The notes under the pieces were generated by a model. The model was not told the origin of the DNA, ran no database searches, and saw nothing but the letters and a program-made list of their open reading frames with translations. A stretch of DNA of 64,000 bases, taken from positions 124,001 to 188,000 of the IMG/VR virus record IMGVR_UViG_3300043418_000072, one strand, 5' to 3'. The position numbers and the translations under genes are program-made. Of this stretch, positions 17,752 through 56,367 are shown in pieces; position 1 is the stretch's first letter, and each line of letters opens with the position of its first letter.

Positions 17752-18954
17752 TTACCAGGTAGTCAATGCACTACGCTTCCAAGTATTGGTTGCAGTGCAT
17801 ACATAGATATAGCCGGTGTCGTATGCAATCTGCCCTTTTACGCCTGCGCTTGATGCAGTGGACGGAGCAGTGCCGGTAGCAACAATTAGGTTAGCAACTG
17901 AAGTAGTTACACCGACTGTAAATGTACCGCTGTTTAGAGTGTTACCATGGAAACGAGCAACTTCGGCATTAGCAAAGAAGCTACCAGATGCAATAACAAC
18001 GTCGTTATATGAACCAGCATTGCTGGTACCTAATACCAAGTTACCACCAAAGCTGCTGCTTTCTGGTTTGGTAATCAAGTAACCGTCGTTTTTCTTAGTG
18101 ATAGTATAGTTACTGTCGGAGAAGTTATTGCCAGTGAATCCCATGTCAACCCAACCACCGGCGTCGCTGCCTGCAGAGCTATATGCTGCAAAGTCTGCGC
18201 TACCAGTATTGGTGTTGTTGAACAATGCAACTTGTGCATAGTTAACACCTGCATCAACAGCAACAATAGTTGGGGTAATTAGTGTGCGAGTAGTTGCATC
18301 TGGACCAATATATAGGTTTTGTGAGCTAATAACAACGTTACCAGTAACAGTTAAGTTACCGTGTACTTTGTTGGCATCACGAGTCATGTCAATAACAAAG
18401 TAGCTGGCACCGTTATCGCTGCTGATAAACTCATACAAGTAATCGCCGGTAGCATCAAACGTAATAACGTTAGCAACATCGCCTGCAATTTCGCTTGGGA
18501 AACCTAGAGTAGCTTGCACTGGTAATGTTAGAGTGTATGCAGTACTAGTAACGCTAACCCAAAGGATTAATCGTCCCATAACACCAGTTGCTGGCCAGTT
18601 ATTGAAACCAACTGTTAAGCTACCACCAGTGGTAATACGTTGGTAGTTACCTTGGTTATAGTCTACAGTTTGGCTACCTAGCAAGGAACCGTTGTTGTAA
18701 AATGTTTCGCTAAATGCAGTTAACTGAGCATGGTTCAGGGTAGTACCACTTGCGCTCAAATCATTGCTTAGGGTTGTGTTGTTTAGTGCAGATTTTAGCA
18801 ATACTTTAGATTGCAGATCTTCTAATTCGCTTTTAACGAAAGCAAAGTTATTGCGAGTATTGGTAAAATTATCGCGAAAACCTTGACTGTCGTTATCTTG
18901 GCCGGCTACGGGATACGTACCGTCAATGTTAAATGGATTAACTTGGCTTGTCAT
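17752..18954 (-). CDS. Virion/tail-associated protein
   Basis: T/G/N/S-rich beta composition; C-terminal GQIAYDTGYIYVCTATNTWKR; ATAAATA at 18988-18994. Confidence 0.65.
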   Translation of the reverse strand: MTSQVNPFNIDGTYPVAGQDNDSQGFRDNFTNTRNNFAFVKSELEDLQSKVLLKSALNNTTLSNDLSASGTTLNHAQLTAFSETFYNNGSLLGSQTVDYNQGNYQRITTGGSLTVGFNNWPATGVMGRLILWVSVTSTAYTLTLPVQATLGFPSEIAGDVANVITFDATGDYLYEFISSDNGASYFVIDMTRDANKVHGNLTVTGNVVISSQNLYIGPDATTRTLITPTIVAVDAGVNYAQVALFNNTNTGSADFAAYSSAGSDAGGWVDMGFTGNNFSDSNYTITKKNDGYLITKPESSSFGGNLVLGTSNAGSYNDVVIASGSFFANAEVARFHGNTLNSGTFTVGVTTSVANLIVATGTAPSTASSAGVKGQIAYDTGYIYVCTATNTWKRSALTTW

Positions 18955-21389: not shown

Positions 21390-23677
21390 TATAGTATTAC
21401 CGCTTCAATTTGGCCAATGCCATCATTTTCTTTATTGTTAAGTGCCTTAGCAAATACCGCAGGACCATATGTCTTATCGTTACCAACACTTACTGCACAT
21501 CCCGGTGTGGTACTTGTAACAAGCAAATCACCTTTGGCGACCTTGCCAATTACATTAACTGGAATACGTCCACGCAATGCAATAGCAACACCATCTAGTT
21601 CAGCATTCATCAAGTAAGCTGGATCGGTTGTAACTGCACCAGCAACTCTAGAGTCTGCAAATTCAGTGGCAACGGTAACTTCTTGTGTGCCACCAAATAC
21701 TAACACAGTACCTGGAGCATAGTCGCTGTCGCTTGTGTACTTTTCTGCCAAGTCGGCGTATTTGGCTTGACTTGACACACCGTAGATATTGTTAAACCAT
21801 GCAGTTGGGCTACCTAAGTTAACAGTGGCGTTACCAGTAGGAACAATCGCTGCACTTACGTTAATGCCAGCAAATGTAGGAGCTGCGCTAGTACGGATAT
21901 CTTGTGGGGTAGCCAAGGTTACTGTGCTACCGCTTACGGTTGCAGTAACACCGCTGGTGCCAGCAAATGTTAATGATCCGTTAGCTGCACCTGTACCGCT
22001 TGTGCCTGTGAGTGGCAAGTTAATAACTTGTGCAGCAATCGATGTTGCACGTCCTTTGCTGTCCACAGTGACCACAGGATAGTATGTAAGGTTACCATAT
22101 GTACCAGCGGTTACACCAGTTGCAGTTAAACTAACACCTACGCTAGGTCCACTTGGGATGTTAGCAGTGATATCTGCGGTGTTAGCAATCGCAGTTGATA
22201 CAAATGGCGCACCGTTAGCAAAGCCAATATTATTAGCATACAGTCCGTTTGTGTATACGTTACCGCTTACACCAATGCCCCCGGCTACAATTACTGCACC
22301 AGTTGTTAAGTTTGCACTTGCTGTGGTGTTGTTAATTTGTAAACGAGTAAATGTACCAGATCCTGGGCCCTGGTCGCCAATACTGATAAAGTTACCAATA
22401 CTAGATCCGTACACACCAATTGGCGTGTTGTTGATACTACCACCTACATACAAGTTACCAGCAATACCAACACCACCCTTGACAACAAGAGCACCGGTAG
22501 TAATACCAACGCTGTTAGTTGTTGCGCCAGCAACAATGTTACCGCTTGCGTTTATAATACCAGTAGATGTAATGGTAGTAAATGCCCCTGTGTTAACAGT
22601 GCCGGTTCCAATCGGAGCGTTAACACTACCTGCGTATACTGCACCACTAATACCGGCACCACCATTGACTACTAAGGCACCAGTGGTTGTACCGGTGCTT
22701 GCAACTTGGCTATTGGCAAAGATATTACCACGAGCTTCTACCACAGCATTGAATAGAGTGTATCCAGGTACAGTACCACCAGTAAATGATGCGGCTGATG
22801 TAGCAACTGCGGACCCGTTAATATAAATGGTGTCAGAACCACTAAAATACAAACTACCAAGAACTGAGCCAGATACAGATAAGTTGGCTACGTTGGCTTG
22901 GGTACCATATACGTTACCTAAGAAGTTGGTTGCAGCGATATTACCAGCAGCCGCAATGCCACCTCGGGTCACAATAGCGCCAGTGGTGGTGTTAGTAGTT
23001 GCGGTGGTGTTAGTAACAAACAAGCTACCCACTTTGACGTTACCGTAAGTTCCGCTGAAAGTGTTGCCCGCCGACTCAATACCGTCTGCGTAAAACTCTA
23101 ATGCCTGGCTATCATTGGCCCAAACAAGGGCAGCATGTTTATCCGAAGTCTTGTAGTAGTGAAACTTTAAGCCAATATCCTTGCCGTCATCGAACGTCAA
23201 TGGGTCAAGGCCGGTGGTGTGCAAGTTAATCAAGCTATCTTGTACGGCTAAGTCTGCAGAACTAACAGTTACAGAGTTACCAAGGACAGTCAAGTTGCCA
23301 CCAATTACCACGTTTCTAGTGACTTGGATATCGTTGGTGACGTTTAGACTGTCTTGTACATAGGTGTTGCCAGTGGAAGTGATTCTACTAGCAACAAATG
23401 CGTTATTAACTGTTAAATTGGCAATTTGTGCATTGCCTGCAATGTTTGCGGTACTGTAAACTTCTAAGGTGTCGGTTACTGTTGGGCCAAGACTTGTTAA
23501 TAACAAGTTAGCTTGAATGTAAGTGCCGCTGTAAACAACGCCAAAATTACCAGTACTGATTCTGGCATCAATGTTGCTGAAGTTACTATTTACAGTAGTA
23601 AATGCTGTGCGAATTGCATCGCCTGTTCCGTCGTTTGCAACGGCGCCTGTGTTTACGAATCTTACGTCTGAACTCAT
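21389..23677 (-). CDS. Tail fibre-like protein with gp9/gp10-type N-terminus and intramolecular-chaperone-like C-terminus
   Basis: VNTGAVANDGTGDAIR; GALVVxGGxGI repeats; YADLAEKY...GTVLVFGG. Confidence 0.75.
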   Translation of the reverse strand: MSSDVRFVNTGAVANDGTGDAIRTAFTTVNSNFSNIDARISTGNFGVVYSGTYIQANLLLTSLGPTVTDTLEVYSTANIAGNAQIANLTVNNAFVASRITSTGNTYVQDSLNVTNDIQVTRNVVIGGNLTVLGNSVTVSSADLAVQDSLINLHTTGLDPLTFDDGKDIGLKFHYYKTSDKHAALVWANDSQALEFYADGIESAGNTFSGTYGNVKVGSLFVTNTTATTNTTTGAIVTRGGIAAAGNIAATNFLGNVYGTQANVANLSVSGSVLGSLYFSGSDTIYINGSAVATSAASFTGGTVPGYTLFNAVVEARGNIFANSQVASTGTTTGALVVNGGAGISGAVYAGSVNAPIGTGTVNTGAFTTITSTGIINASGNIVAGATTNSVGITTGALVVKGGVGIAGNLYVGGSINNTPIGVYGSSIGNFISIGDQGPGSGTFTRLQINNTTASANLTTGAVIVAGGIGVSGNVYTNGLYANNIGFANGAPFVSTAIANTADITANIPSGPSVGVSLTATGVTAGTYGNLTYYPVVTVDSKGRATSIAAQVINLPLTGTSGTGAANGSLTFAGTSGVTATVSGSTVTLATPQDIRTSAAPTFAGINVSAAIVPTGNATVNLGSPTAWFNNIYGVSSQAKYADLAEKYTSDSDYAPGTVLVFGGTQEVTVATEFADSRVAGAVTTDPAYLMNAELDGVAIALRGRIPVNVIGKVAKGDLLVTSTTPGCAVSVGNDKTYGPAVFAKALNNKENDGIGQIEAVIL

Positions 23678-25657: not shown

Positions 25658-26499
25658 GTCCAAAGGCTTTTACGTAGCTTGATTAGCCGAATCATCATAT
25701 CTTCGTCCTCTTGCTCCCACTCTTGCTCAAGTTGATCAATAGTAGCACGGATAGCATCGTACTCTTGTTGCTCAGTGGCAGTAAGTTTACCGCGTCTACC
25801 ATTGCCCAAGGACCCCCATAACCAGTTATCCCCGTACTTGGTATCCATACGCACGTTAAAATCATCCCACCCAGATACTTCGTATGCAGCATTGTCAGTA
25901 CGCACACTGCGAATTTCCTTCCACCAGGTGTATAAGATCATGGTTTCACGGGCGGCTTGTGCTTGACTGTCACAACGTTCGGTTATATCCTTGTTAGGGT
26001 TGTCGAGATCGATCTCCCAACGCAAGTGGTCAAGGCCTGCTTGTGGGCAACGCCACTCTCCCCAATACGCCATACGAAATTTCTTCCACCATGGAATACT
26101 GTATTTTGCTCGATCTTCTTTAGCGCCCCATGCAACTGCGTGACTGGCCTTATCGATTTCAACAAAGTCCACAAGTTCACTAAAAAGTCCGTGCAAAATT
26201 CTAGTTTCGTACTCGTACCACTTACCGGGCTGTAGTCTAGTCTTTAGATAATGAGTTTTTGTGATCCAGCGATTTCGAAAGTAATAACGAACGTCATTGA
26301 TGGGGTCAATAGTCCATTTAGCAGGATACTCGACCCAGTCCGGGAGTACTTCAGTGAAGAAATATGCTACAGGTCGTTGTGCTTTCAATTCGGCTTCCCA
26401 TTTTTCAAATCCTCCCCATGGCAGGGCATATGGCTTGTCAATGTTAAGTTTGTTACGCAACCAGCTAACTAGTGCGCTGCTACTATAATGTCTGCTCAT
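25654..26499 (-). CDS. Trp-rich hypothetical protein
   Basis: 281-aa ORF. Confidence 0.8.
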   Translation of the reverse strand: MSRHYSSSALVSWLRNKLNIDKPYALPWGGFEKWEAELKAQRPVAYFFTEVLPDWVEYPAKWTIDPINDVRYYFRNRWITKTHYLKTRLQPGKWYEYETRILHGLFSELVDFVEIDKASHAVAWGAKEDRAKYSIPWWKKFRMAYWGEWRCPQAGLDHLRWEIDLDNPNKDITERCDSQAQAARETMILYTWWKEIRSVRTDNAAYEVSGWDDFNVRMDTKYGDNWLWGSLGNGRRGKLTATEQQEYDAIRATIDQLEQEWEQEDEDMMIRLIKLRKSLWT

Positions 26500-26773
26500 G
26501 TTGTTTACTCAGTATATCAAAAAGTGTGCCAATTTTAAAAACTGCTATATTGTCGGCAGGCTCCTCTACATCGAGTGCAGAGTGGAATTCTATTAGTGTG
26601 CGCATTGCAATCTGCCCAAATGAAATGCCAAACAGTTCAACCCATCTAGTTTTCATTAAGGACTTTGTTCCGTCAAATGTTGCATAGTAGCAATCATCAA
26701 TGATGTCGATACTAACTTTAACCCCGAGAGGTTTTAGTTTAGCTTTGCATTTATCAACAAATTCAAAATCCAT
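26483..26773 (-). CDS. Hypothetical protein
   Basis: TAATG-coupled; ends in TAG. Confidence 0.65.
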   Translation of the reverse strand: MDFEFVDKCKAKLKPLGVKVSIDIIDDCYYATFDGTKSLMKTRWVELFGISFGQIAMRTLIEFHSALDVEEPADNIAVFKIGTLFDILSKQHEQTL

Positions 26774-27039
26774 TAGGACCACTTTAGTGTAAACATCATT
26801 GCATCTTGCTCTCGCTTGAATGCAAAGTAACTGCCGACATTACGCCACTCGCTACTTTTGAGATTCTCGTAGCACCAGCGCTCTTGTTTATCTGTGGTCT
26901 CGGCTTTGACGTGGTACGGCCAATACTTCTTGTTTAGTACTCTCATGCGATGTTCCTCATCAATTTGGGCCCAAAATGCTCTGCTTCGTGGGCCTTCAAA
27001 ACAGCTTGGGTACATGCTGCTGATATCATTATCGATCAC
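26773..27039 (-). CDS. W-cassette; N-terminal PolB motif A-like peptide
   Basis: Ends FKREQDAMMFTLKWS; GTGA-coupled. Confidence 0.8.
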   Translation of the reverse strand: MIDNDISSMYPSCFEGPRSRAFWAQIDEEHRMRVLNKKYWPYHVKAETTDKQERWCYENLKSSEWRNVGSYFAFKREQDAMMFTLKWS

Positions 27040-32392: not shown

Positions 32393-32674
32393 CTATGCCC
32401 ATTTCAAACTAAACATTAACAGATCGCTTTCGCGGCGGAATACAAAGATCAAATCTGAGATATCTTCAAGATTGTCATCGTTGTCGTAGTACTCTTCTTC
32501 CTCTTCGTCGCTGCCTGGAACTAGTACTTCTTCATAGCAGTACCAATCTTCGGCGCCCAGCCATGTATTGTTTGCATGTCGCTTGCTACCAGGGCCAACG
32601 TTAGCGTTGAGCCATGCTTCGATTTGATCTAATTGATCGTGATGCTTGTGTGCTAGTTTAAGTTTATAACTCAT
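32393..32674 (-). CDS. W-cassette with acidic insert
   Basis: WLNANVGP, ends MFSLKWA-TAG. Confidence 0.8.
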   Translation of the reverse strand: MSYKLKLAHKHHDQLDQIEAWLNANVGPGSKRHANNTWLGAEDWYCYEEVLVPGSDEEEEEYYDNDDNLEDISDLIFVFRRESDLLMFSLKWA

Positions 32675-34481: not shown

Positions 34482-34897
34482 TACACACTCCAGTATAGAC
34501 TAAACATTACAGCATCTTGCTCATTGTTAAATGCAAAAAATAGAATGTTGTGGCTTAGACCCATGCACCCTTGCGTCCATTCGCCATCCCAACTCTTGTC
34601 AACTGGGAGGATATCTTCTCTCCATTTACCGGTGGCATTTGCTGCGCACCACGTGGTCATGTTATCAACTACGGTGATCCATCCTTGGCCATGCCGCCGT
34701 TCCAGTGGCACTGTGTCGTCAAACGGGACGAGGTAAGGGTAGCCACGATACACGTCCTTACGAATACTACCACCACGTGCGCAAAAATCAGGATCATTTA
34801 TGAGATCAAACTGGCGCTGAGTCCATCCCTTCTTCTTAAGGTAACGGGCATGTCGCCATGCTTGAAACCTACCTACCGTAGCGTGTAGTAACTTCAT
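34481..34897 (-). CDS. W-cassette with N-terminal extension
   Basis: Ends EQDAVMFSLYWSV. Confidence 0.75.
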   Translation of the reverse strand: MKLLHATVGRFQAWRHARYLKKKGWTQRQFDLINDPDFCARGGSIRKDVYRGYPYLVPFDDTVPLERRHGQGWITVVDNMTTWCAANATGKWREDILPVDKSWDGEWTQGCMGLSHNILFFAFNNEQDAVMFSLYWSV

Positions 34898-35084
34898 CTA
34901 GTGTTTTCTTTGCTATTTTTCCTGACGGATGATCTGGGTGCATACGTGCGATATCATCTAGTGCAGTCCACATCAACTCGTGTTCGTGTTGTTGCTGGTA
35001 TACCTTATCCCGCAAGCGACTGGCATCCATAATGCTTAGGACACCAGCAATTAACTTGGGAAGGATACGAGCAAGGAATTCCAA
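34869..35084 (-). CDS. Hypothetical protein
   Basis: Start uncertain; ends in TAG. Confidence 0.55.
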   Translation of the reverse strand: MEFLARILPKLIAGVLSIMDASRLRDKVYQQQHEHELMWTALDDIARMHPDHPSGKIAKKTLDEVTTRYGR

Positions 35085-40147: not shown

Positions 40148-40444
40148 CTACACAAATGCGATGCCCGATGACATAACGGCATAAACATCACAGGCGTTAT
40201 CAGTAAAAATGCCTCTTACTAGGTAACTTTCTTTTTCTGTTCCTACCATCAGTTTTGGCTCAAATGTATCACGATCCAATACCGTGCATTCAACATTTTC
40301 CGCAATAACTCTGTAATAGTTAGATGCTTTAGTAACTACCTGTTCTGTTACGGGTTTGCCATAATTATCAAAGGTAATTTCTTCGTAATGGTTGTAGATA
40401 TCATCTAATACACCCTGTGGGATTTCTTCACGATTTATAATCAT
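40148..40444 (-). CDS. Hypothetical protein
   Basis: Ends in TAG; followed by orphan FGVEE repeat. Confidence 0.7.
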   Translation of the reverse strand: MIINREEIPQGVLDDIYNHYEEITFDNYGKPVTEQVVTKASNYYRVIAENVECTVLDRDTFEPKLMVGTEKESYLVRGIFTDNACDVYAVMSSGIAFV

Positions 40445-43990: not shown

Positions 43991-44170
43991 CTAACTCCAT
44001 TTTAAAACAAACATCATTTCATCCTCGGGCGTGTCAAACTCAACCATAAAGTACAAGTAATCGTCTTTACGGTAGCTGTCATGAAAATGCCCATTGGGAA
44101 TATCACTGAGCCCGCTTTCAATCATGCGTTGCTGAATGTTGACCCAGTCAATCATACGGTACGTTAACAT
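43991..44170 (-). CDS. W-cassette (59 aa, not in track)
   Basis: ...VEFDTPEDEMMFVLKWS-TAG. Confidence 0.75.
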   Translation of the reverse strand: MLTYRMIDWVNIQQRMIESGLSDIPNGHFHDSYRKDDYLYFMVEFDTPEDEMMFVLKWS

Positions 44171-48003: not shown

Positions 48004-48180
48004 TCAAGTATTAGTAAACTTTAGCGCAAAAAACGTGCTCATAGGACCATCTTCGATAGTAACTACATATCCCGGCCATTCCCGTTTAAACGGCCAGTGC
48101 TTTACTTTGGACTCTTTGAGAGCTTGCCTGACTGAGTTTATATCTTTATACGGAACTTTTAGTTCAATCGTCTTCTTCAT
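48004..48180 (-). CDS. W-cassette-like protein
   Basis: TFFALKF. Confidence 0.65.
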   Translation of the reverse strand: MKKTIELKVPYKDINSVRQALKESKVKHWPFKREWPGYVVTIEDGPMSTFFALKFTNT

Positions 48181-48739
48181 CGTCAAATCCTTCATTGCCG
48201 CGCATCTCGATATGAATGTATTGGTTATCATAATCCTTATGGTATGCTTCGTTTGCATTTAGCACACGATACTGGTTGGGATACTTGAGTGCTAACATTA
48301 GCATATCATCTCTATTTGTGATCTCGGTAATGATGTACTCAGTGCCACATGCACCGTCTACGTGTTTGATCATGCCATGTTTAAACTCATTGTCGATAAT
48401 AGCAGTGGTTAAATTACTGTGCATAGGCACAATGATGCGATCAAATGGCAAGTGCGGTGTAGGTAAGTTACGATCTAGTATTCCTAATTTGGATAACGTT
48501 GCACAGTTATCTTGGTCAATGGTTAGCTTACATCGCTTGAACTTGATGCTGCCTTTGGTACTGGGATTATCGGGTGTTTCCTTGGTGCTCCAAGGGATTT
48601 CTGCTGTTACGTGATGCACGTAAAAAGTGACTCCGTGTGATTTAATGACCCACATGGGAATGGTCGGATCTGTAAGATGTCCCTTATTGAAGTGGAACAC
48701 TAATTCCTTACATTGGTAGTTGATCTAGGCTTGTGACAT
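48164..48739 (-). CDS. Hypothetical protein with in-frame TAG at codon 5 (candidate read-through gene)
   Basis: AAAGGAG-6nt-ATG TCA CAA GCC TAG ATC AAC..., in frame with the 178-aa track ORF. Confidence 0.65.
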
Positions 48740-48753
48740 GAGTTTCTCCTTTG

Positions 48754-49047
48754 TTATGTCGTTGTAATATTATATATGCCTTTAAGGCCGTCTGTCAATT
48801 CATTTAGACGATCTCGATAGCGAAGTTGTAGATATGTGTACTGCGCTGGGGTAACATTTCTAAACACCACACGATCAAGGTGATGAACAACTCGTTGTTC
48901 GGTTGCCATATCGCGCCACCCACTGTCAAACATACTGGACTCGGGTTTGAGACCATGTGTGTTAACTAGGTCAAAGTCCATATCGGTTTCGTTAAGAAAC
49001 TCTACATCATCTGAATTAAGGGCGTTGCGTAATAAGTAATCAGTCAT
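48754..49047 (-). CDS. W-cassette-like variant
   Basis: YLQLRY; similar to 33725. Confidence 0.6.
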   Translation of the reverse strand: MTDYLLRNALNSDDVEFLNETDMDFDLVNTHGLKPESSMFDSGWRDMATEQRVVHHLDRVVFRNVTPAQYTYLQLRYRDRLNELTDGLKGIYNITTT

Positions 49048-49966
49048 TGAACTCTTCGTACTCGCGTTTTTCAGCGTCAAGTACTTTCTTCATTGCATCA
49101 ATCAGCAGCAAGTAACCTTCAGGTTCTTGTTGTTGGCTACCAGCACCCGATTGTGGGCTCCAGAACTTGCGGGTCTCTAACATAAATCCATCGATCCACA
49201 CGGCTTTGAGGTACTCAGTTAACATCCCTCTAAGACCTTCGCGATCGTTGGCTTCGACATAGTCACAAACCATAAGACTGGGGCGAACCAAACTGCTGTA
49301 ACGATACTCGTCATGTGCTAGCCACTGTGCCGCAGTATTTAATTGAGCTCTTTCTTTGCCTTCGTTGAGAATACGTAGGCCACGCAATGGATCAAATCGG
49401 AATAGATCTTTCTTGCACGATTCAAACAAGTGATCCACACATGCAGCAACGTCTTTAACTACATCAGCAAAGGTGATGTTGATGTAAGCGTCATCCCATC
49501 CACTGGTGCCGTTGTTGGCACCCACATAGCGTTCAACAACACGGTTCTCGATCACGTGATCAAAAACGTCCTTGTGGATCATTACAAATCCCACGTGCTG
49601 GCGCTGGCGCTCGTAGCGACCTTTGATGAACAAGCGACTCTCGTGTACTGCTTCAAAGAACACATCTGCATCAAAGCCTTCGCGTTTGACCGGAATGTCG
49701 TGAAATGTATTCTCTCCCTGTGGCAACTCAACCAGTTCTTCTTTGATAGCATTTATAACCAAGTCAACCCCGAGACCTGTGCAGTCCTCTGCGCCACCGT
49801 AGTCGTTATACTTGGCATAGAACGGCATCATTACTGGTGCGTAAAATGGGGTAGTGTAACAAAGACTGTCCACACCGTTGTTTTTAACAAGTGCAAACAC
49901 AACCACGTCTTGATTGGCGCGAATGTGTAGCTGAGACAGTCCACAAGTTTGATTCCAACATCCCAT
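49040..49966 (-). CDS. Hypothetical protein
   Basis: MGCWNQTC start, YNDYG; AAGGA RBS. Confidence 0.8.
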   Translation of the reverse strand: MGCWNQTCGLSQLHIRANQDVVVFALVKNNGVDSLCYTTPFYAPVMMPFYAKYNDYGGAEDCTGLGVDLVINAIKEELVELPQGENTFHDIPVKREGFDADVFFEAVHESRLFIKGRYERQRQHVGFVMIHKDVFDHVIENRVVERYVGANNGTSGWDDAYINITFADVVKDVAACVDHLFESCKKDLFRFDPLRGLRILNEGKERAQLNTAAQWLAHDEYRYSSLVRPSLMVCDYVEANDREGLRGMLTEYLKAVWIDGFMLETRKFWSPQSGAGSQQQEPEGYLLLIDAMKKVLDAEKREYEEFND

Positions 49967-49980
49967 TTGAGTTCCTTAAT

Positions 49981-50265
49981 TTACTCGTTGTCCAAAATAG
50001 CGAAGATTTCTTCTTCCTTGATTACCAGCAGAGTTTCGCCCTTAACTGTTACAGTAATTGTGGCAGATGGATTGTACATCACGCGATCACCGACTTGCAC
50101 TGTAAGTGGGATGGGTGCGCCATCTTTAACGGGCTTGCCTGTGCCTACTGCTACAACTTCGGCTTCGTAAACCGGAGTTACTGAAGTAGTTAGCATAATG
50201 CCACCTGCGGATTTTGTTTCGGGTTCAAGTTTCTTGATTAGAACTCTGTCGTGCATTACTTGCAT
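49981..50265 (-). CDS. groES: Co-chaperonin GroES
   Basis: HDRVLIK, SAGGI, VVAVGTG, VQVGDRV, EEEIFAI. Confidence 0.95.
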   Translation of the reverse strand: MQVMHDRVLIKKLEPETKSAGGIMLTTSVTPVYEAEVVAVGTGKPVKDGAPIPLTVQVGDRVMYNPSATITVTVKGETLLVIKEEEIFAILDNE

Positions 50266-50280
50266 GTTATTTCCTTATTA

Positions 50281-50394
50281 ACCATAGTTAAGTACACTGC
50301 CGGAGTAGCAAGAACCAACTTGCCCACTTTGTTCCGTCCTGGATAGATTACTCTACTGGTTCCCAGGCAAACCGCTAATGTACTTAACTATGGT
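50281..50394 (-). ncRNA. Structured tRNA 3' trailer closed by a perfect 16-bp inverted repeat
   Basis: ACCATAGTTAAGTACA (50281-50296) / TGTACTTAACTATGGT (50379-50394); internal GNRA hairpin. Confidence 0.6.
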
Positions 50395-50465
50395 GCGCTA
50401 GGCGGGAATCGAACCCGCGATTCAGAGGTTTAGAAACTCCTGCTATACCATTTAGCTACTAGCGC
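50391..50465 (-). tRNA. tRNA with CUA anticodon (amber suppressor), CCA encoded
   Basis: 75-nt cloverleaf GCGCTAG...TT-CTA-AA...TTCGATT...CTAGCGC-A-CCA. Confidence 0.9.
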
Positions 50466-50473
50466 ATTTTGTA

Positions 50474-50502
50474 ATTATAACAAGAGCACTGATGTTAGTC
50501 AA
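50474..50502 (-). promoter_or_regulatory. sigma70-type promoter for the tRNA
   Basis: TTGACT-17-TATAAT. Confidence 0.85.
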
Positions 50503-50517
50503 TGCCCTTGTTGTTCA

Positions 50518-51921
50518 TTATTTCATGCTGTTAGCACGAACTTGTTCGAAAGTGATTTCGTTAAACAATGCACCGTTCTGGAAAACAGTTTGCAATGCTT
50601 CAGTCCAACCACCAATGCCTTTGTCGCTCCAACCAGTAGGGGCTTGCACACTTGTTGAAAACTCGCCACCACTGTTGGTCCACAACTTAACACGGCCTTT
50701 GAGTGATGCTTTGCCACTGTCAGTGATGGGGTCTTTGTAAACATCAACCCATTCACCGTTGACACATGCACTGGAACATTTCATAGCCCACTTCTGTGTA
50801 TCACGATCAATAGCTTGCAGCAAAGCACCACCCATACCAAATGCAAAGTTATCTGCTGACCAACCTTGGAAATCAACCATAGTGCGCAAGATGCTTTGGA
50901 TGCTAACAGTGTTGATACCATCGCCCCAGATCATGCGTACATTGTTGAGTACCTTGTAGCCCTTGTCATTGGTAGTGTATCCAAAGCCTTCTGCAAGAAT
51001 TGCAATCATCTTTGGCATGACTTCAACAGGATCACCTGAGTCAGGACGGATAACAACTGTGGCACCTGAATCAATCACTTGCTGTTTCAAGTCACCAGTA
51101 CTCCACATTTTACATGCTTCGTAGATGTTGTAGCTGTCACTAACAACTGCAACAATACCGCCTGGCTTACCAAACTGTGTGACCATGTTGCTGTAGGCGT
51201 TCAGTTCACCTGCACGACCCCAACTAGTGATAGTACTGTGCTCGGCAGCTGGAATTGAAAAACCTGCGATGCCAGCATTGTAATATTCGCGAGCGTACAG
51301 TACACCAGTAATAGTGTCGGTACCCATGAAGTTGACCAAGTGGGCCGCACCCCCAATACCAGCACTCTCCATTGAAGATACACCACGAGCACCAAAATCG
51401 TGCAGTTTAAAACCGATAGTAGTAGGATCACCAGATTTCTCCAAGTATTCTTGCAAGATGTTTTTAATGTACTTGCTTTGTGTTGAGACTGTAGTTGGGT
51501 ACCAGACTGCACGAAGCAATGGAGTTTCCAACCATGTGGTTAAACCGTGGCACTTGGGGTCAGTGTTTTCGATTGTGACCAGTGCGTTTCCAACTGGGAC
51601 AACAGTGCCTTCTGGTACGGCTTTAATGACCACGGGCAAGTAGCCGTTGTGTGCTTCGACGATGTAGTCCCACATGGTGCGGTCGAATGGTTCGCCGTGT
51701 GCTGTGAGGATTTCTTCTGCGATGTCAACGTCGGCTTTTGTAATTGGGTCAAGTAAATACTCCTTGAAGAAAATTTGCAGTCCAACAACTTGTGTGAATG
51801 TGAATTTGCCGCCGCGGGCTGCAATGTAGCTGAATACATTAGTAGTGCCAGCTGGGTATTGAGGCGCCATACTAACTTTGTAGCTGTCAGTATTGAGAAT
51901 GATGTTTTTAGAGAGTTTCAT
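50518..51921 (-). CDS. nadV: Nicotinamide phosphoribosyltransferase
   Basis: TDSYK, LHDFGARG, AAEHS, VSDSY, IRPDSG. Confidence 0.95.
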   Translation of the reverse strand: MKLSKNIILNTDSYKVSMAPQYPAGTTNVFSYIAARGGKFTFTQVVGLQIFFKEYLLDPITKADVDIAEEILTAHGEPFDRTMWDYIVEAHNGYLPVVIKAVPEGTVVPVGNALVTIENTDPKCHGLTTWLETPLLRAVWYPTTVSTQSKYIKNILQEYLEKSGDPTTIGFKLHDFGARGVSSMESAGIGGAAHLVNFMGTDTITGVLYAREYYNAGIAGFSIPAAEHSTITSWGRAGELNAYSNMVTQFGKPGGIVAVVSDSYNIYEACKMWSTGDLKQQVIDSGATVVIRPDSGDPVEVMPKMIAILAEGFGYTTNDKGYKVLNNVRMIWGDGINTVSIQSILRTMVDFQGWSADNFAFGMGGALLQAIDRDTQKWAMKCSSACVNGEWVDVYKDPITDSGKASLKGRVKLWTNSGGEFSTSVQAPTGWSDKGIGGWTEALQTVFQNGALFNEITFEQVRANSMK

Positions 51922-52003: not shown

Positions 52004-52204
52004 CTATTCTGTTCCGCCAATTTTCTTGGCACGTTGGATACGTTCGTAATCTTCGCGGCATTCCTTTGAGCAAAAAATGCCTTCAGTTGGCTCATCACAA
52101 GACAAGCAGAACCCATTTGATTCTGGAACCGTTTGGCGATTGCGGAGGTTGTTTTGCAACCAAATGTCTGATGCGTTTGCTGCGTCTTCTAACATATCAC
52201 TCAT
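52004..52204 (-). CDS. C4 Zn-finger protein (TraR/DksA-like or Zn-ribbon)
   Basis: MSD..EDA, CLSC...FCSKEC. Confidence 0.65.
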   Translation of the reverse strand: MSDMLEDAANASDIWLQNNLRNRQTVPESNGFCLSCDEPTEGIFCSKECREDYERIQRAKKIGGTE

Positions 52205-52461: not shown

Positions 52462-52679
52462 TATAACTCCACTCTTTCAAAGTAAATCTTGGCAAAGCCC
52501 ATGGGGCTTGTTGCACGGCGTTCAATTTGTAGATACAAACGTGTCGGAGTATCCTCTAACACATGGTGCACCACAATCTGATCCATGGTATCGTTAAACA
52601 CTTGAGTCCTAACTTGTTCAGCTAAGAACAGTTGTTGACTACGCCGGGGTTGATAGTTGCTCTTGTGCATCTTAAACAC
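52461..52679 (-). CDS. Hypothetical protein
   Basis: Coupled ORF. Confidence 0.6.
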   Translation of the reverse strand: MFKMHKSNYQPRRSQQLFLAEQVRTQVFNDTMDQIVVHHVLEDTPTRLYLQIERRATSPMGFAKIYFERVEL

Positions 52680-53691
52680 CTACCGCCCATTGGACCATAT
52701 CGTAGTGGTCTTCAAAACACTCGTCGCTACGCACTTCTGCAATAGGAACCCAACGTGCTTTCTCTGCATCGTCACTGCCTTTTACTTTAGGCAATGCACC
52801 ATCAGGCAATTCAATCTTGTAGCAATGAGTAATGATACGACCACGTGGTGAACGATCAACAGCATCAAACACACGGTTGCCCGTAATGCTACCACGCAAC
52901 ACTGGCTCAGGTACTTTGATACCAGTTTCTTCACGGAGTTCGCGAATAGCTGCATCAAGTACGGTCTTGTCGGTGCTGGCGTTAACGTAACCACCAGGCA
53001 GTGCCCACAAGCCACGACCTGGCTCAGCACGGCGTTTGATCATAAGCACATGGCCTGAGCAAATTACTGCGGCATCTGCTGTGCTAAAGATTGGAGGGTA
53101 CTTCAAGCTGGCATATTGCTTGTTGTGTTCAATCAAGAATTCACGCTCACGGATAATCTGTGCAAATTCCTCAGTCTTACGAAAATTCATCAAGAAGTCA
53201 TAAGTTGATTGAGGTACAACATTCTTAATAAAGTTGCTGTTGAAGGTCCAGTTAAAGAACAGGTCACGAATGTTCACTGCACTAAGTGGTTCAATTTCCT
53301 CTACATCAACATAGCCCCATTGGGGGAACATGTCCAAGTAGAAACTTGATTCGTCTTTCTTGTGACCAATGATGGCAGTTTTAGTACCCAGGATTCGATA
53401 CTTGCTGACAATACCTTGCACACGAACTGCCCACGCTTGGTCGTTGTACATTGTATCAATGTTTTCTTCAATGTGAATACTCATTGCAAGACCACTTGTT
53501 GCAGCCTTAATCATTTGAGCACGTTCGGCACTGGTGAAGGGGTTTTTGTAAGTGCGGGGTTGAGCAGCTGAGCCTGTGATAATTACCAGATTGTCGGTCA
53601 ATGCTGTGGCTCGCTTGATAATCTCTAAGTGAGCATTGTGGAAGGGTTGAAAACGTCCGATGAGGACTAGTGTTCCGTATTCTTTAGACAT
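52672..53691 (-). CDS. nadM: Bifunctional NMN adenylyltransferase / Nudix ADPR pyrophosphatase
   Basis: GRFQPFHNAH, KNPF, Nudix box PGG...RELREETG. Confidence 0.95.
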   Translation of the reverse strand: MSKEYGTLVLIGRFQPFHNAHLEIIKRATALTDNLVIITGSAAQPRTYKNPFTSAERAQMIKAATSGLAMSIHIEENIDTMYNDQAWAVRVQGIVSKYRILGTKTAIIGHKKDESSFYLDMFPQWGYVDVEEIEPLSAVNIRDLFFNWTFNSNFIKNVVPQSTYDFLMNFRKTEEFAQIIREREFLIEHNKQYASLKYPPIFSTADAAVICSGHVLMIKRRAEPGRGLWALPGGYVNASTDKTVLDAAIRELREETGIKVPEPVLRGSITGNRVFDAVDRSPRGRIITHCYKIELPDGALPKVKGSDDAEKARWVPIAEVRSDECFEDHYDMVQWAVGV

Positions 53692-54618: not shown

Positions 54619-55587
54619 TTATTGTTTGCTTTTGATTAGTGATTGATGTGCAACCAACTGCTCTCTGAGTTGTGCAAATTGCGGATGCACTAGAATGTCC
54701 AATGCAGATTCAATGCTACGTAACGCGGTGTTGAATAATGCAGGCGCTAGATTGTAAATGGCTAGATATTTTGGACTGTTGGCAGTATGTGCAACAAAAG
54801 TACAGCGGGGATTGTTTTCAACTATCTCAACAAAGTACTTGGCCAACGAGTGTATGTCAACGATTGAGATATTTGTGAGAGTGATATGAAATTTTATTTG
54901 AACTGGCAAATCCACAAACTTAGTAATGTTATCTTGTACTATGGACCAGACTGTGCCCGTACGTTGCAGTTCTGCTGTTCGTCCTACTCCATCAATGCTG
55001 AGATTTAATGTTGTATTAAATTTCAGCAGCTTCTCAACAAATATTTGATTGTACACGCTTGCATTGGTGTAGACTCGCAAGTTAATGTCTGTTCTGTCTT
55101 TAGCTATCAAGTGATCTAGCAACTGATAGTAGTGCTTAATTATCATTGGCTCGCCACCAGTTAATGTAAGGAACTTTAGATTCTCTGACATGGTAAGTAT
55201 CTCGGCCCAGTCAGAATCTGAAACGGTATTAACTGAGCCATTGATGAGAGAGCTGTTTTCGCTATTGCACATCTTGCACTGAAAATTACAAAGATTGCTT
55301 GCTCTCAGCTCCATATAATCGAGTTGGTCAACGGTAGTTTCACCATATAGTGCAAGTAGGTGCTGTCTTATACTTTGCAGCCCTGCGTCTTCTAGTGACT
55401 TGCATCCTCCGCAAGTTTCGTCAAACTCGTTATTTAAAAACTTGGTTTTTAAATCTTTAAGGTAATCACTATTTCTAAACTCTACTGGACTCATGCTAAA
55501 CTTCTTAGAACTAATGCAGCACACAGCCGATTGATCGACATGGTAGAACAAAGATCGCCACGGTGCAGGACAAAAGAATTTTTTCAT
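54619..55587 (-). CDS. Radical SAM protein with N-terminal SPASM/twitch-like Cys cluster
   Basis: CNFQCKMC, TGGEPM, YTN, SIDG. Confidence 0.9.
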   Translation of the reverse strand: MKKFFCPAPWRSLFYHVDQSAVCCISSKKFSMSPVEFRNSDYLKDLKTKFLNNEFDETCGGCKSLEDAGLQSIRQHLLALYGETTVDQLDYMELRASNLCNFQCKMCNSENSSLINGSVNTVSDSDWAEILTMSENLKFLTLTGGEPMIIKHYYQLLDHLIAKDRTDINLRVYTNASVYNQIFVEKLLKFNTTLNLSIDGVGRTAELQRTGTVWSIVQDNITKFVDLPVQIKFHITLTNISIVDIHSLAKYFVEIVENNPRCTFVAHTANSPKYLAIYNLAPALFNTALRSIESALDILVHPQFAQLREQLVAHQSLIKSKQ

Positions 55588-55605
55588 AGAATAGAGTGTG
55601 TAATT

Positions 55606-55631
55606 AGAAAATAGGGGCCGAAGCCCCTATT
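55606..55631 (-). terminator. Terminator after tmRNA
   Basis: AATAGGGGC-TTCG-GCCCCTATT-TTCT. Confidence 0.85.
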
Positions 55632-55632
55632 A

Positions 55633-55953
55633 CTATTTCCTGTTGCAAGGCATAGCTGCCCCGGAAGCCTTTATCAGGCAACCATTAGAAACTGTGAGTC
55701 GTTTGCATTTACTTTTTTTGCTTCTACGGCCGGGAAACCCCAACCCTACGGCTTCTGCTTTGCCGAGCTGTCCACTTGTTTACTTGTTGCCCTGTCGAAA
55801 CCATGGCAGGCCCATCAAAAACATACTAAGCACTTTACACCGATATCGTTTCTTAAGTTCGCCCACGATGTATCGAATAGTACGCTTTTGGTGGACCTGG
55901 CGGGAGTCGAACCCGCGTCCAGAACACTTTTCTCTTTGCTTCATACAGCAATA
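55633..55953 (-). ncRNA. ssrA: Circularly permuted two-piece tmRNA; tag ANDSQFLMVA
   Basis: Acceptor piece ends ...GGGTTCGACTCCCGCCAGGTCCACCA (55889) before coding piece GGGCCTG... (55813); G3-U70; tag 55674-55706; ends approximate. Confidence 0.9.
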
Positions 55954-55980
55954 ACTTATATTATAGCACAAGACTATAAT

Positions 55981-56367
55981 TTAACGACCTGTAGTTGTCC
56001 AATCCAGCACAACTTCATCGGTGGTAGCATCTCGTAATTGGTAACGGCGTTCAATTCCTGATGCTTGCTGAAAAGAAGCAACAGTAGTGGACTCGCCATC
56101 GACATGTGCTTGAGCTTGATTTTCTAACGCCAGTTCGTCGAAACATTTGTTAAACTGCTCAACTGATTCAAACATCATAGTTACTGTAGTGACTACAGAT
56201 CCATCAGGCATGTCAGCTCGTGTAGTGACATTTAACTCAGATCCGGGTGCGCTATACTTTGCAATTATTGCATCACGTGCATCATACACATGCTTGAATT
56301 CCGGGCGGTGTAGTGGTCTAACTGCCCCAGCTGGTGTAGTAATTTCTTTAATATACTTGATCATCAA
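55981..56367 (-). CDS. Hypothetical protein
   Basis: TAAATA at 56384-56389, GGAG RBS. Confidence 0.75.
   Translation of the reverse strand: MMIKYIKEITTPAGAVRPLHRPEFKHVYDARDAIIAKYSAPGSELNVTTRADMPDGSVVTTVTMMFESVEQFNKCFDELALENQAQAHVDGESTTVASFQQASGIERRYQLRDATTDEVVLDWTTTGR

What the first reader, a model, noticed from the sequence alone, without database searches (positions are those of the whole stretch)
50391..50502. Lone amber-suppressor tRNA under its own strong promoter
Seen: CUA anticodon with U33 and A37, encoded CCA, G1-C72, A73, short variable loop, a U31-C39 mismatch; the alternative UCU register breaks the anticodon stem. Known: CUA tRNAs mark TAG-recoded phages; tRNA-Pyl lacks the D-loop GG and T-loop TTC, both present here. 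The inserted amino acid is unknown.
Basis: partly seen in the sequence, partly recalled or inferred. Interest (0 to 1): 0.8.

Follow-up and report, generated by a model that had tools for sequence, protein, structure and literature searches.

The report
Suppressor tRNA paired with amber-gated gene
A freshwater giant phage that uses the normal genetic code carries a tRNA that reads the UAG stop codon. A nearby gene has a conserved UAG a few codons after its start, so it can probably be translated only when that tRNA is present. Hundreds of related phages carry the same pairing.

Summary
Window 50391-50465 (minus strand) is a canonical tRNA with anticodon CUA, an encoded CCA end and a U31-C39 mismatch. 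Its -10 box ends 8 nt upstream of base 1, in a near-consensus sigma-70 promoter.

The window and about 2 Mb of related loci read well in the standard code, while truly recoded control loci fetched by the same scan stand out clearly.

The tRNA has a specific target. About 1.7 kb downstream on the same strand, a gene with its own 12/12 promoter and a strong ribosome-binding site begins ATG TCA CAA GCC TAG (TAG at 48725-48727). It then runs 186 codons.
- In 79 of 80 loci found through this protein, the homolog has ATG, 1-8 further codons, then TAG, never TAA or TGA.
- 71 of those 80 loci hold a CUA tRNA. Seven of the other nine have under 250 nt of upstream DNA.
- A second, unrelated family with the Pth2 (peptidyl-tRNA hydrolase) fold is gated the same way in other phages.
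- A cultured Rhizobium phage carries an unannotated copy of the pairing.

The best reading is a natural "amber gate" that makes one gene's translation depend on the phage tRNA. The gated protein's function and the inserted amino acid remain unknown.

The parts
50474..50502 (-). Sigma-70-type promoter of the tRNA: TTGACT, 17-nt spacer, TG-extended TATAAT. The -10 box ends 8 nt before tRNA base 1.
   Evidence: 11 of 12 matches; 50 of 76 distinct family tRNAs have a promoter of at least 9/12 at the same distance, against 10 of 380 control positions.
50391..50465 (-). tRNA with anticodon CUA (amber suppressor type), CCA encoded, non-Watson-Crick 31:39 pair.
   Evidence: Searches detect it. Family covariation: 92.7% of cells paired, 17 of 21 pairs with changes on both sides, 0 of 500 shuffles as high. 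CM R1 scores it 93.2 bits.
50281..50394 (-). Very stable stem-loop spacer. Its 18-bp basal helix includes the ACCA 3' end of the tRNA. It is a likely processing site separating the tRNA from the downstream mRNA; a role for RNase III is inferred, not shown.
   Evidence: -48.5 kcal/mol, z -5.3. It is conserved in L004, L005 and L007 only. No Rfam match.
49981..50265 (-). GroES-like co-chaperonin gene lying between the tRNA and the gated gene.
   Evidence: Pfam Cpn10, E 1.6e-23. L085 and L142 have the same order tRNA - groES - gated gene. Covered in the metatranscriptome run X3.
49040..49966 (-). 308-aa ORF of unknown function inserted in the cassette of this lineage.
   Evidence: No Pfam match. 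phrog_5960, unknown function, E 5e-19.
48769..48798 (-). Perfect consensus sigma-70 promoter (TTGACA, 18-nt spacer, TATAAT) in front of the gated gene.
   Evidence: 12 of 12 matches. Sequence read.
48746..48752 (-). Ribosome-binding site AAAGGAG, 6 nt before the ATG of the leader.
48725..48739 (-). Leader of the gated gene: ATG TCA CAA GCC followed by an in-frame TAG at 48725-48727. The next codon is ATC.
   Evidence: It is the only case of ribosome-binding site + ATG + up to 10 codons + TAG + long ORF in the window. The TAG is intact in DNA and RNA-library contigs of independent runs.
48164..48724 (-). Body of the amber-gated gene: 186 codons plus stop. It has an N-terminal beta domain, a C-terminal ferredoxin-like domain and an acidic tail. 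The family is conserved, phage-only and unnamed.
   Evidence: 921 protein clusters, none with a Pfam domain; 414 IMG/VR contigs; alignment and AlphaFold2 model, pLDDT 81.7. Searches found no family or fold assignment.
55583..55981 (-). Two-piece (permuted) tmRNA with tag ANDSQFLMVA. It often lies near the cassette in relatives. A functional link is inferred only.
   Evidence: A tmRNA lies within 10 kb of the gated gene in 33 of 80 loci.

Best explanation
The tRNA is a working amber suppressor whose dedicated task is to read one conserved UAG placed a few codons into a nearby phage gene. I call this arrangement an "amber gate".

Proposed sequence of events:
1. Host RNA polymerase transcribes the tRNA from a strong early-type promoter that starts at or within about 2 nt of the tRNA 5' end.
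2. The 3' end is freed by cleavage in the long stem that follows, then trimmed back to the encoded CCA.
3. A host synthetase charges the tRNA. Which one is unknown. Lys, or less likely Gln, is my low-confidence guess, based on recalled E. coli amber-suppressor work.
4. The gated gene at 48164-48739 has its own perfect promoter and a strong ribosome-binding site. Ribosomes load efficiently, make Met-Ser-Gln-Ala and then meet UAG.
5. Release factor 1 ends translation there unless the charged suppressor wins the competition.
6. Full-length protein therefore appears only when, and in proportion as, the phage tRNA is present.

A gate at the N-terminus has two advantages. The aborted product is only a tiny peptide, and any inserted amino acid is tolerated.

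The phage's own genes rarely end in TAG, which limits self-damage from read-through.

What is shown and what is inferred:
- Shown: the tRNA, both promoters, the conserved in-frame TAG, the co-occurrence of tRNA and gated gene, and the standard code elsewhere.
- Inferred: charging, actual suppression, the competition with release factor 1, tRNA processing, and the purpose of the gate (delay, dosage control, or sensing of translation state).
For: The tRNA is under selection as a CUA tRNA.
- All 22 contigs from the anticodon-free scan carry CTA.
- 46 distinct family members keep the cloverleaf through compensatory changes, 17 of 21 pairs.
- U33, C34, U35, A36, A37, G1-C72, C2-G71, G3-C70, A73 and the encoded CCA stay fixed or nearly fixed.
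- The dedicated promoter is conserved at a fixed distance from the tRNA.

The target gene is conserved with its TAG.
- Every one of 36 tblastn matches to the L092 homolog in the loci already held is preceded by a ribosome-binding site, ATG, a few codons and TAG.
- In 80 loci found through the protein alone, 79 have this leader.
- The stop is always TAG. TAG ends only about 6% of genes in these phages.
- Leader length and sequence vary: 2, 3 and 4 codons in 33, 13 and 12 of 62 distinct genes, and 5, 6 or 9 in the remaining four. The codon after TAG is always ATT, ATC or ATA.
- The first residues after the TAG are conserved and form the first beta strand of the model. That stretch is therefore translated.

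The tRNA and the gated gene occur together.
- A CUA tRNA is present in 71 of 80 protein-ascertained loci: 60 by ARAGORN and 11 by the covariance model. It lies on the same strand, mostly 100-400 nt or 1-3 kb upstream.
- Seven of the nine remaining loci have under 250 nt of upstream DNA.
- For comparison, only 5 of 80 nadV-ascertained loci held a CUA tRNA, and three of those are this phage lineage.

The design recurs independently.
- A Pth2-fold family carries the same N-terminal ATG-x-TAG next to CUA tRNAs of different scaffolds.
- This includes L164 and L189, where the first family has lost its TAG.
- Scanning 2.0 Mb for leader + stop + open frame gives TAG 136, TAA 23, TGA 16.

The code is otherwise standard.

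The gated gene and groES are found in a metatranscriptome library with the TAG unchanged.
Against: - No experiment shows that the tRNA is charged or that the UAG is read through.
- About a fifth of the closest homologs (26 of 120) have no TAG. The gate is therefore dispensable for the protein. At least two phages with a TAG-less copy still keep a CUA tRNA, although they gate a Pth2-like gene instead.
- The homologs share descent, so 79 of 80 is not 79 independent events.
- Two loci with several kb of upstream DNA show no tRNA: L183 and L058.
- Only 64 kb of a 354-kb genome was read, so other UAG-containing genes may exist.
- The RNA-library contigs cannot exclude contaminating DNA, and the tRNA itself was not covered.
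- The function of the gated protein is unknown, so the benefit of gating is conjecture.
Confidence: 0.7

Rival explanations
1. Genome-wide or late-gene TAG recoding (code 15), with the tRNA as the general decoder.
For: - CUA tRNAs do mark recoded gut phages. Recoded loci with Gln-like CUA tRNAs were fetched by the same scan. The published model is in bioRxiv 10.1101/2021.08.26.457843.
- Only 18% of this genome was seen.
- One relative (L132) has an in-frame TAG in its DNA ligase gene.
Against: - The window reads well in the standard code, and tail-like genes at 17752-23677 are intact.
- In relatives, the gp23 capsid and prohead protease genes right next to the cassette are intact in the standard code.
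- There is no coverage gain specific to TAG.
- The homology-based search found no other spanning in-frame TAG in about 0.6 Mb.
Confidence: 0.05
2. The ATG-x-TAG is a genuine mini upstream ORF that ends at TAG. The main protein would start by re-initiation at the adjacent AUU/AUC or at a later GTG, and the tRNA would be unrelated to it.
For: - AUU is a known rare start codon (my own knowledge).
- Gene callers start the protein at a downstream GTG or ATG.
- TAG-less homologs show that the leader residue is not needed.
Against: - Only TAG is ever used, although TAA and TGA end 94% of genes.
- The leader is always in frame with no gap.
- A CUA tRNA is nearly always present on the same strand.
- In the Pth2-like family the codon after TAG is AAC or GTA in some members, and AAC cannot start translation.
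- The stretch right after the TAG is conserved as protein and is part of the fold. The ribosome-binding site is spaced for the ATG, not for the Ile codon.
Confidence: 0.1
3. The tRNA mainly acts on the host or serves as insurance. It would read through host UAG stops to disturb host or defence proteins, or rescue phage nonsense mutations. The gated gene would be a side effect or a monitor.
For: - The promoter is of the early, host-polymerase type.
- TAG is the rarest stop in these phages, and TAG-ended genes in the window have back-up stops 0-21 codons later.
- A phage tmRNA that could clear read-through ribosomes is often nearby.
- The 'detoxified stop codon' step is part of the published model.
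Against: - It does not explain why one gene family keeps a TAG at the same place across about 50% protein divergence.
- It does not explain why a second family converged on the same design.
- TAG stop usage is equally low (about 6%) in related loci with and without a CUA tRNA in view.
- This reading is not exclusive of the best explanation.
Confidence: 0.15
4. The UAG encodes a special, non-standard amino acid, as in the pyrrolysine system.
For: A few genes with in-frame UAG plus a dedicated CUA tRNA is the pyrrolysine pattern. ARAGORN labels the tRNA 'Pyl'.
Against: - The tRNA has a canonical D loop (GG), a canonical T loop and a 5-nt variable loop. Its anticodon stem is effectively 4 bp, not 6.
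- No synthetase or biosynthesis genes were seen among the neighbours annotated.
- The UAG sits in a leader of variable length.
- TAG-less homologs simply lack that residue.
Confidence: 0.03

Closest known systems
Suppressor-tRNA-based stop-codon recoding in phages (crAss-like, Lak, Agate and others; Borges et al., bioRxiv 10.1101/2021.08.26.457843; theta-ribozyme paper PMC10879173)
   Same: A phage-encoded CUA tRNA is made in a standard-code host. In-frame UAG blocks translation of phage genes until the tRNA is present. The published proposal is that this acts as a post-transcriptional regulator, after earlier depletion of TAG stops.
   Different: - Here the genome keeps the standard code. One gene (two in some relatives) carries one UAG, always within the first 3-10 codons and usually next to the tRNA.
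- The hosts are freshwater and soil Proteobacteria-type hosts, not gut Bacteroidota or Bacillota.
- The tRNA is a distinct GCG...CGC-A73 lineage, not Gln-like.
- No release factor or synthetase gene was seen, and no HDV-like ribozyme was found.
Laboratory amber mutants with suppressor tRNAs (for example T4 psu suppressors) and synthetic amber-gated circuits. Recalled from my own knowledge.
   Same: Expression of a gene depends on a suppressor tRNA through a single UAG.
   Different: This arrangement is natural, conserved and self-contained: the tRNA and its target travel together. The UAG is placed where any amino acid is tolerated.
prfB (RF2) autoregulation through an early in-frame UGA (PMC12421855 was listed; the mechanism is recalled from my own knowledge)
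   Same: An in-frame stop early in a gene acts as a sensor of termination efficiency and sets the output of that gene.
   Different: prfB escapes the stop by +1 frameshifting and senses RF2. Here escape would be by a cognate suppressor tRNA competing with RF1. No feedback loop is shown.
Pyrrolysine system (tRNA-Pyl CUA with in-frame UAG in methyltransferase genes)
   Same: A dedicated CUA tRNA serves a small set of genes with in-frame UAG.
   Different: The tRNA architecture is canonical, there is no PylS or PylBCD, and the UAG lies in a dispensable leader.
CUA tRNAs annotated in cultured standard-code phages with no known target (Stenotrophomonas phage Summit, PMC9022506; cluster C mycobacteriophages; Rhizobium phage RHph_I1_18)
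   Same: An orphan 'tRNA-Pyl', 'OTHER' or 'Sup' annotation in a genome that uses the standard code. Mycobacteriophages also carry a tmRNA.
   Different: Here a target was found. In RHph_I1_18 the target is an unannotated ORF with TAG at codon 6, ending 12 nt before the tRNA. I did not test whether Summit or the mycobacteriophages have such targets.

Membership tests
tRNA (Rfam RF00005) | Score above the curated threshold, and a cloverleaf supported by covariation | tested here: met
   66.7 bits against a threshold of 29. Across 46 family members, 17 of 21 pairs have changes on both sides, and 0 of 500 shuffles reach the observed values.
Amber suppressor tRNA | Anticodon CUA in a standard 7-nt loop with U33 and a purine at position 37, conserved among relatives | tested here: met
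   Loop UUCUAAA. CTA in 22 of 22 contigs from the anticodon-free scan and in all 46 aligned members.
Amber suppressor tRNA | In-frame UAG codons exist that need it | tested here: met
   Conserved TAG at codon 5 of the gene at 48164-48739, and in 79 of 80 homologs.
Amber suppressor tRNA | Aminoacylation and read-through activity in vivo | not testable with these tools
   Needs charging assays, reporters and mass spectrometry.
tRNA-Pyl | 6-bp anticodon stem, 3-nt variable loop, small D loop without GG, no T-psi-C sequence, and a pylS/pylBCD gene context | tested here: not met
   GG and UUCGA are present, the variable loop is 5 nt, and the anticodon stem is effectively 4 bp. No such genes were seen among the annotated neighbours.
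TAG-recoded (code 15) phage | Many genes interrupted by in-frame TAG, with coding density rising specifically when TAG is read as sense | tested here: not met
   Positive controls behaved as expected. Only 64 kb of the 354-kb genome was read.
tRNA with a 3' HDV-like theta ribozyme | HDV-like ribozyme fold starting at the tRNA 3' end | tested here: inconclusive
   No Rfam match at E up to 1 in 50300-50600. The spacer folds as a long hairpin. I did not run a dedicated theta-ribozyme descriptor.
Pth2 peptidyl-tRNA hydrolase (the second gated family, found in relatives and not in the window) | Sequence-profile and fold match to Pth2 | tested here: met
   - Pfam PF01981: 23.4 bits against a threshold of 23 for L104.
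- The family profile hits PDB Pth2 chains at E 6.8e-5 to 4e-3.
- The top 15 Foldseek hits are all of the Pth2 fold (named hydrolases or structural-genomics entries); the top 13 have TM 0.62-0.74.
- Catalytic residues were not examined.

The most novel reading that the evidence does not exclude
Phages of aquatic and soil bacteria carry a portable, natural "amber gate". It consists of a dedicated suppressor tRNA lineage (GCG...CGC-A73, with a deliberately unpaired 31:39 position) plus genes whose first few codons contain a UAG.

The gated genes include a Pth2-type peptidyl-tRNA hydrolase and an unknown two-domain protein. These two are neighbours in jumbo rhizobiophages. The gate may therefore couple production of translation-maintenance factors to the balance between suppressor tRNA and release factor 1 in the infected cell.

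Probability: 0.45. Interest if true: 0.85.

Novelty: new variant of a known kind. Interest (0 to 1): 0.78.

Why it matters
- **Orphan suppressor tRNAs.** Cultured standard-code phages are annotated with CUA tRNAs that have no known target (for example PMC9022506). Here a target was found, and in Rhizobium phage RHph_I1_18 it is an unannotated ORF right next to the tRNA.
- **Regulation.** Stop-codon suppression may be used as a single-gene switch rather than only as a genome-wide code change. This could be an early or alternative branch of the proposed route to recoding.
- **Annotation.** The family is called in databases in two wrong ways. Standard-code calls truncate it at a downstream GTG or ATG. 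Code-15 calls print Q at the UAG. The family comprises 921 protein clusters and at least 414 IMG/VR contigs.
- **Testability.** A cultured system exists: Rhizobium phaseoli with phage RHph_I1_18.
- **tRNA biology.** The conserved non-Watson-Crick 31:39 pair offers a natural case for studying how anticodon-stem architecture affects stop-codon decoding.

Tried and rejected
- **Recoding.** I rejected genome-wide TAG recoding after three tests: ORF coverage under four codes, stops flanked by long open frames, and inspection of the gaps between called genes.
- **First homology screen.** The first screen for in-frame TAGs was swamped by conserved antisense frames. After filtering only the L132 DNA ligase case remained. 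A second apparent case, shared by L112, L124 and L144, was just two adjacent genes in one frame.
- **TAG-stop depletion.** I tested whether TAG stops are specifically depleted in tRNA-bearing loci. They are not: about 6% in both sets, p = 0.56.
- **Ancestry of the tRNA.** The nearest sense tRNA among those fetched is a tRNA-Met(CAU) at 80% identity. In RHph_I1_18 no sense tRNA comes closer than 69%. Neither result is informative about which amino acid is loaded.
- **Function of the gated protein.** No assignment came from any of these:
  - Pfam, PHROGs and NCBIfam
  - ESM Atlas
  - a PDB sequence profile
  - Foldseek against PDB, AFDB and BFVD
  - VIA-align, which showed only a generic ferredoxin-like C-terminal domain at Z up to 5.5
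- **Weak resemblances.** The faint matches to LepA, EF-G and RF3 domains are below what can be trusted.
- **Gene neighbourhood.** The neighbours (AhpC, an AhpD-like protein, a zinc-ribbon protein) gave no functional lead.
- **Host identity.** The genome-contig scan gave only mis-binned phage contigs in MAGs.
- **Literature.** Searches found no description of this arrangement. The library does not cover most subscription journals.
Full report
**1. The observation**

ARAGORN finds one tRNA in the window, at 50391-50465 on the minus strand, with anticodon cta. Rfam's tRNA model scores it 66.7 bits against a threshold of 29. Read on the minus strand, it has the following features:
- acceptor stem GCGCUAG/CUAGCGC, discriminator A73 and an encoded CCA
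- U8 and A9, a 4-bp D stem and a D loop containing GG
- anticodon arm GGAGU-UUCUAAA-CCUCU, giving U33, C34 U35 A36, A37, A38 and a U31-C39 mismatch
- a 5-nt variable loop and T arm GCGGG-UUCGAUU-CCCGC

ARAGORN's label 'Pyl' only reflects the anticodon; the architecture is canonical.

A promoter TTGACT-17-TG-TATAAT lies at 50502..50474 and matches 11 of 12 positions. Its -10 box ends 8 nt before G1.

**2. The setting**

The window is part of a 354-kb IMG/VR contig, 3300043418_000072, at contig positions 124001-188000. It belongs to a giant phage from freshwater.
- Nearly all genes lie on the minus strand.
- The region around the tRNA holds nadV (50518-51921), an NMN adenylyltransferase/Nudix gene, a radical SAM gene, a groES-like gene and a DNA ligase.
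- It also holds a two-piece tmRNA at 55583-55981.
- Several near-perfect sigma-70 promoters occur in this stretch. The region therefore looks as if host polymerase transcribes it early.
- The identical tRNA is present in two further contigs from other metagenomes, one with only 94% identity in nadV.

**3. Not a recoded phage**

- Under the standard code my gene call gives 127 genes and 85.5% coding. Stop codons are TGA 67, TAA 54 and TAG 6.
- Reading TAG as sense adds less ORF coverage than reading TGA or TAA as sense.
- Only one minus-strand TAG is flanked by long open frames. It lies across a terminator hairpin in front of a gene, not inside one.
- The gaps between called genes hide no TAG-split genes.
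- The same test on loci fetched by an anticodon-arm pattern separates two groups cleanly. Loci with Gln-like CUA tRNAs (acceptor UGCCCUA or UGGGG) rise from 0.31-0.46 to 0.76-0.91 coverage when TAG is sense. Loci with this tRNA's type do not.
- TAG ends about 6% of genes in related loci, whether or not a CUA tRNA is in view.

**4. The tRNA is a conserved lineage**

- A scan that fixed the acceptor and anticodon stems but left the anticodon free returned 22 contigs, all with CTA.
- I aligned 46 distinct CUA tRNAs: the window's own, L164's, and 44 from loci found through the partner protein rather than the tRNA.
- On this alignment the cloverleaf is 92.7% paired. 17 of 21 pairs show changes on both sides, and no shuffle or slid control comes near.
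- Fixed or nearly fixed features are G1-C72, C2-G71, G3-C70, A73, CCA, G30-C40 and U33 through A37.
- Pair 31:39 is non-Watson-Crick in 41 of 46 members (C-A, A-C or U-C), while the other four anticodon-stem pairs covary.
- A recent paper reviews evidence that 4-bp anticodon stems change stop-codon decoding (PMC13092985). There it is the top pair, 27:43, that is open. The parallel is a lead, not a match.
- A promoter of at least 9/12 with the -10 box 7-9 nt before G1 is present in 50 of 76 distinct members, against 10 of 380 control positions.

**5. The partner gene**

Printing the DNA downstream of the family tRNAs showed that in many loci the next gene begins ATG, one to a few codons, TAG, then ATT GAA TAY.

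A tblastn search with the L092 protein against everything held gave 36 matches. Every one is preceded by a ribosome-binding site, an ATG, a short variable leader and an in-frame TAG.

The window's copy is on the minus strand:
- ribosome-binding site AAAGGAG at 48752-48746
- ATG at 48739-48737, then TCA CAA GCC
- TAG at 48727-48725
- ATC AAC TAC CAA TGT and onward, to the stop at 48166-48164

The mechanical ORF list had only the truncated 48164..48700 from a GTG. The gene has a 12/12 promoter at 48798..48769. It is the only case of ribosome-binding site + ATG + up to 10 codons + TAG + long ORF in the window.

**6. Testing the link without tRNA-based ascertainment**

- The protein family has 921 clusters in the large protein collection. 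None has a Pfam domain or an informative name.
- Among the best 120 sequences:

| N-terminus in the database | Count | Meaning |
|---|---|---|
| 'Q' at the TAG position | 53 | Product of code-15 gene calling |
| Truncated, starting at (M/V)FHFNK | 41 | Almost all are standard-code calls cut short by the TAG |
| Genuinely TAG-less | 26 | For example L164 |

- I verified the code-15 artefact on L162, where the DNA reads GCC TAG ATC.
- A protein-seeded scan of IMG/VR found 414 contigs, of which 80 loci were kept.
- 79 of the 80 have the ATG...TAG leader.
- ARAGORN finds a CUA tRNA on the same strand in 60 loci. A covariance model built from the family finds it in 11 more, where the D or T loop is unusual; all of these read CUA.
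- Of the nine loci left, seven have under 250 nt of upstream DNA.
- Among 62 distinct gated genes the leader has 2-9 codons. The codon after TAG is ATT 51, ATC 9, ATA 2.
- As I recall from classical work on context effects, an A after UAG favours suppression.
- The residues directly after the TAG are conserved and form the first strand of the AlphaFold2 model. Translation must therefore pass this point.

**7. A second gated family, and cultured phages**

- I scanned 161 loci (2.0 Mb) for ribosome-binding site + ATG + 1-10 codons + stop + at least 50 open codons. The counts were TAG 136, TAA 23, TGA 16.
- 107 of the TAG cases are the family above.
- A second group, all TAG, has the Pth2 peptidyl-tRNA hydrolase fold. 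The evidence is Pfam, a PDB sequence profile, and an AlphaFold2 model whose top 15 Foldseek hits are all of the Pth2 fold (named hydrolases or structural-genomics entries), the top 13 with TM 0.62-0.74.
- This second family is gated in L104, L146, L153, L164, L189 and L246, next to CUA tRNAs of different scaffolds.
- L164 and L189 are exactly the loci whose first-family gene has lost its TAG. In these two loci, then, the rule that a CUA tRNA goes with at least one N-terminally gated gene nearby still holds.
- In the cultured Rhizobium phage RHph_I1_18 an unannotated ORF reads ATG AGT GAG TTC ATG TAG AAC GAA. It is a short homolog with the N-terminal domain only, and it ends 12 nt before the annotated 'tRNA-Pyl(cta)'.
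- In Sinorhizobium phage Phosso a homolog of that domain lies two genes after a 'peptidyl tRNA hydrolase'.

**8. What the gated protein is**

Its function is unknown.
- The model (pLDDT 81.7, pTM 0.50) has a beta-rich N-terminal domain, a ferredoxin-like C-terminal domain and an acidic disordered tail.
- No search gave a trustworthy match.
- The family is confined to phage DNA.
- Frequent neighbours are AhpC-type and AhpD-like genes and a zinc-ribbon protein. In T4-like relatives the gp23 capsid and prohead protease genes lie nearby and are intact in the standard code.

**9. Expression evidence**

Contigs of one freshwater metatranscriptome library cover 48042-49596 and 49849-50244. One of them spans the leader with no differences, so the TAG is unchanged there. 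Contaminating DNA cannot be excluded, and the tRNA itself is not covered. Loose ends from other runs show relatives with the same TAG ATT GAA TA junction.

**10. Mechanism**

The best-supported reading is an amber gate. The tRNA is made early and competes with release factor 1 at the UAG in the leader of a strongly transcribed and strongly initiated gene. Full-length protein then depends on the tRNA.

Placing the UAG in a variable N-terminal leader makes the aborted product trivial and frees the system from needing a particular amino acid.

The physiological purpose could be a delay, a dosage limit or a read-out of translation state. It is not established. The Pth2 link and the frequent tmRNA hint at translation maintenance.

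The amino acid inserted is unknown. From my recollection of E. coli amber-suppressor work, the fixed G1-C72, C2-G71, G3-C70 and A73 together with U35 would favour Lys over Gln. That is a guess.

**11. Comparison with what is known, and novelty**

The closest known system is suppressor-tRNA-driven stop-codon recoding of gut phages, proposed to time late genes. This case shares the logic but not the form:
- the code is otherwise standard
- one conserved UAG sits at the very start of one gene, or two genes in some relatives
- the tRNA is a separate lineage with its own promoter
- the pairing is widespread in freshwater and soil phages

I found no description of it in the searchable literature. 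I rate it a new variant of a known kind.

Noticed in passing
window 55583-55981 (-): Two-piece (permuted) tmRNA with tag ANDSQFLMVA and a double stop, preceded by a promoter-like site at 56001..55973. A tmRNA lies within 10 kb of the gated gene in 33 of 80 related loci.
   Followed up: partly
window 50281-50394 (-): Very stable hairpin (-48.5 kcal/mol, z -5.3) whose 18-bp base includes the tRNA's ACCA end. It is present only in this lineage (L004, L005, L007) and has no Rfam match.
   Followed up: partly
L107, L127 and L118, directly after the tRNA: Mini-ORFs with an in-frame TAG followed by a Pro-Pro stop: MKDFRL-TAG-IRPP-stop and MEKIPRV-TAG-NMHPP-stop. They look like leader peptides that would stall only after read-through.
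   Followed up: no
L101, L119, L150 and L158, between the tRNA and the gated gene: A conserved, apparently structured element of about 60 nt (GTCCTGGACACGCGGAC ... GGTGGAAGCCCTG). No Rfam match at gathering threshold.
   Followed up: no
L112:6730-6813, L122:2060-2142, L144:8604-8684 (opposite strand, next to the tRNA): Rfam 'freshwater-2' RNA motif (RF02980, 75-76 bits) close to the CUA tRNA.
   Followed up: no
L132 near 6795 (+): The DNA ligase gene of a relative has a single in-frame TAG where homologs have Lys, Ser or Thr. It could be a tolerated nonsense codon in a suppressor-bearing phage, or an error.
   Followed up: partly
L112, L124 and L144 (for example L112 near 5347, -): Two adjacent genes of 206 and 456 codons are separated only by TAG followed by ATG in the same frame. 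Suppression would fuse them.
   Followed up: no
window genes 26483-26782, 32393-32674, 34869-35084, 40148-40444, 43991-44170, 52004-52204 (all -): These are the only six called genes that end in TAG. All are small, and the next in-frame stop lies 0, 2, 10, 1, 21 and 10 codons later.
   Followed up: partly
Proteins P0001, P0002, P0010 and others; L162:162-734: Public protein collections hold this family with 'Q' at the UAG position because some pipelines applied code 15. Other pipelines truncate it at a downstream GTG or ATG.
   Followed up: yes
L164 (NCBI GCA_035707045.1, contig DASSUK010001367.1, 358,784 bp) and L246 (PLXT01000115.1, 170,662 bp): Contigs filed in archaeal MAGs ('Methanosarcina sp.', 'Methanobacterium sp.') carry the phage-type features: CUA tRNA, gated genes and tRNA arrays. 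They look like mis-binned giant phage genomes.
   Followed up: partly
window 50518-51921 and 52672-53691 (-): An NAD salvage pair: nicotinamide phosphoribosyltransferase, and NMN adenylyltransferase fused to a Nudix domain. This is typical of large phages. In L006 and L008 the tRNA-groES block is absent from this position.
   Followed up: partly
Phages collection: Cluster C mycobacteriophages carry a CUA tRNA (annotated Pyl, OTHER or Arg) whose 3' half is 84% identical to this one. I did not test whether they have an N-terminally gated gene.
   Followed up: no
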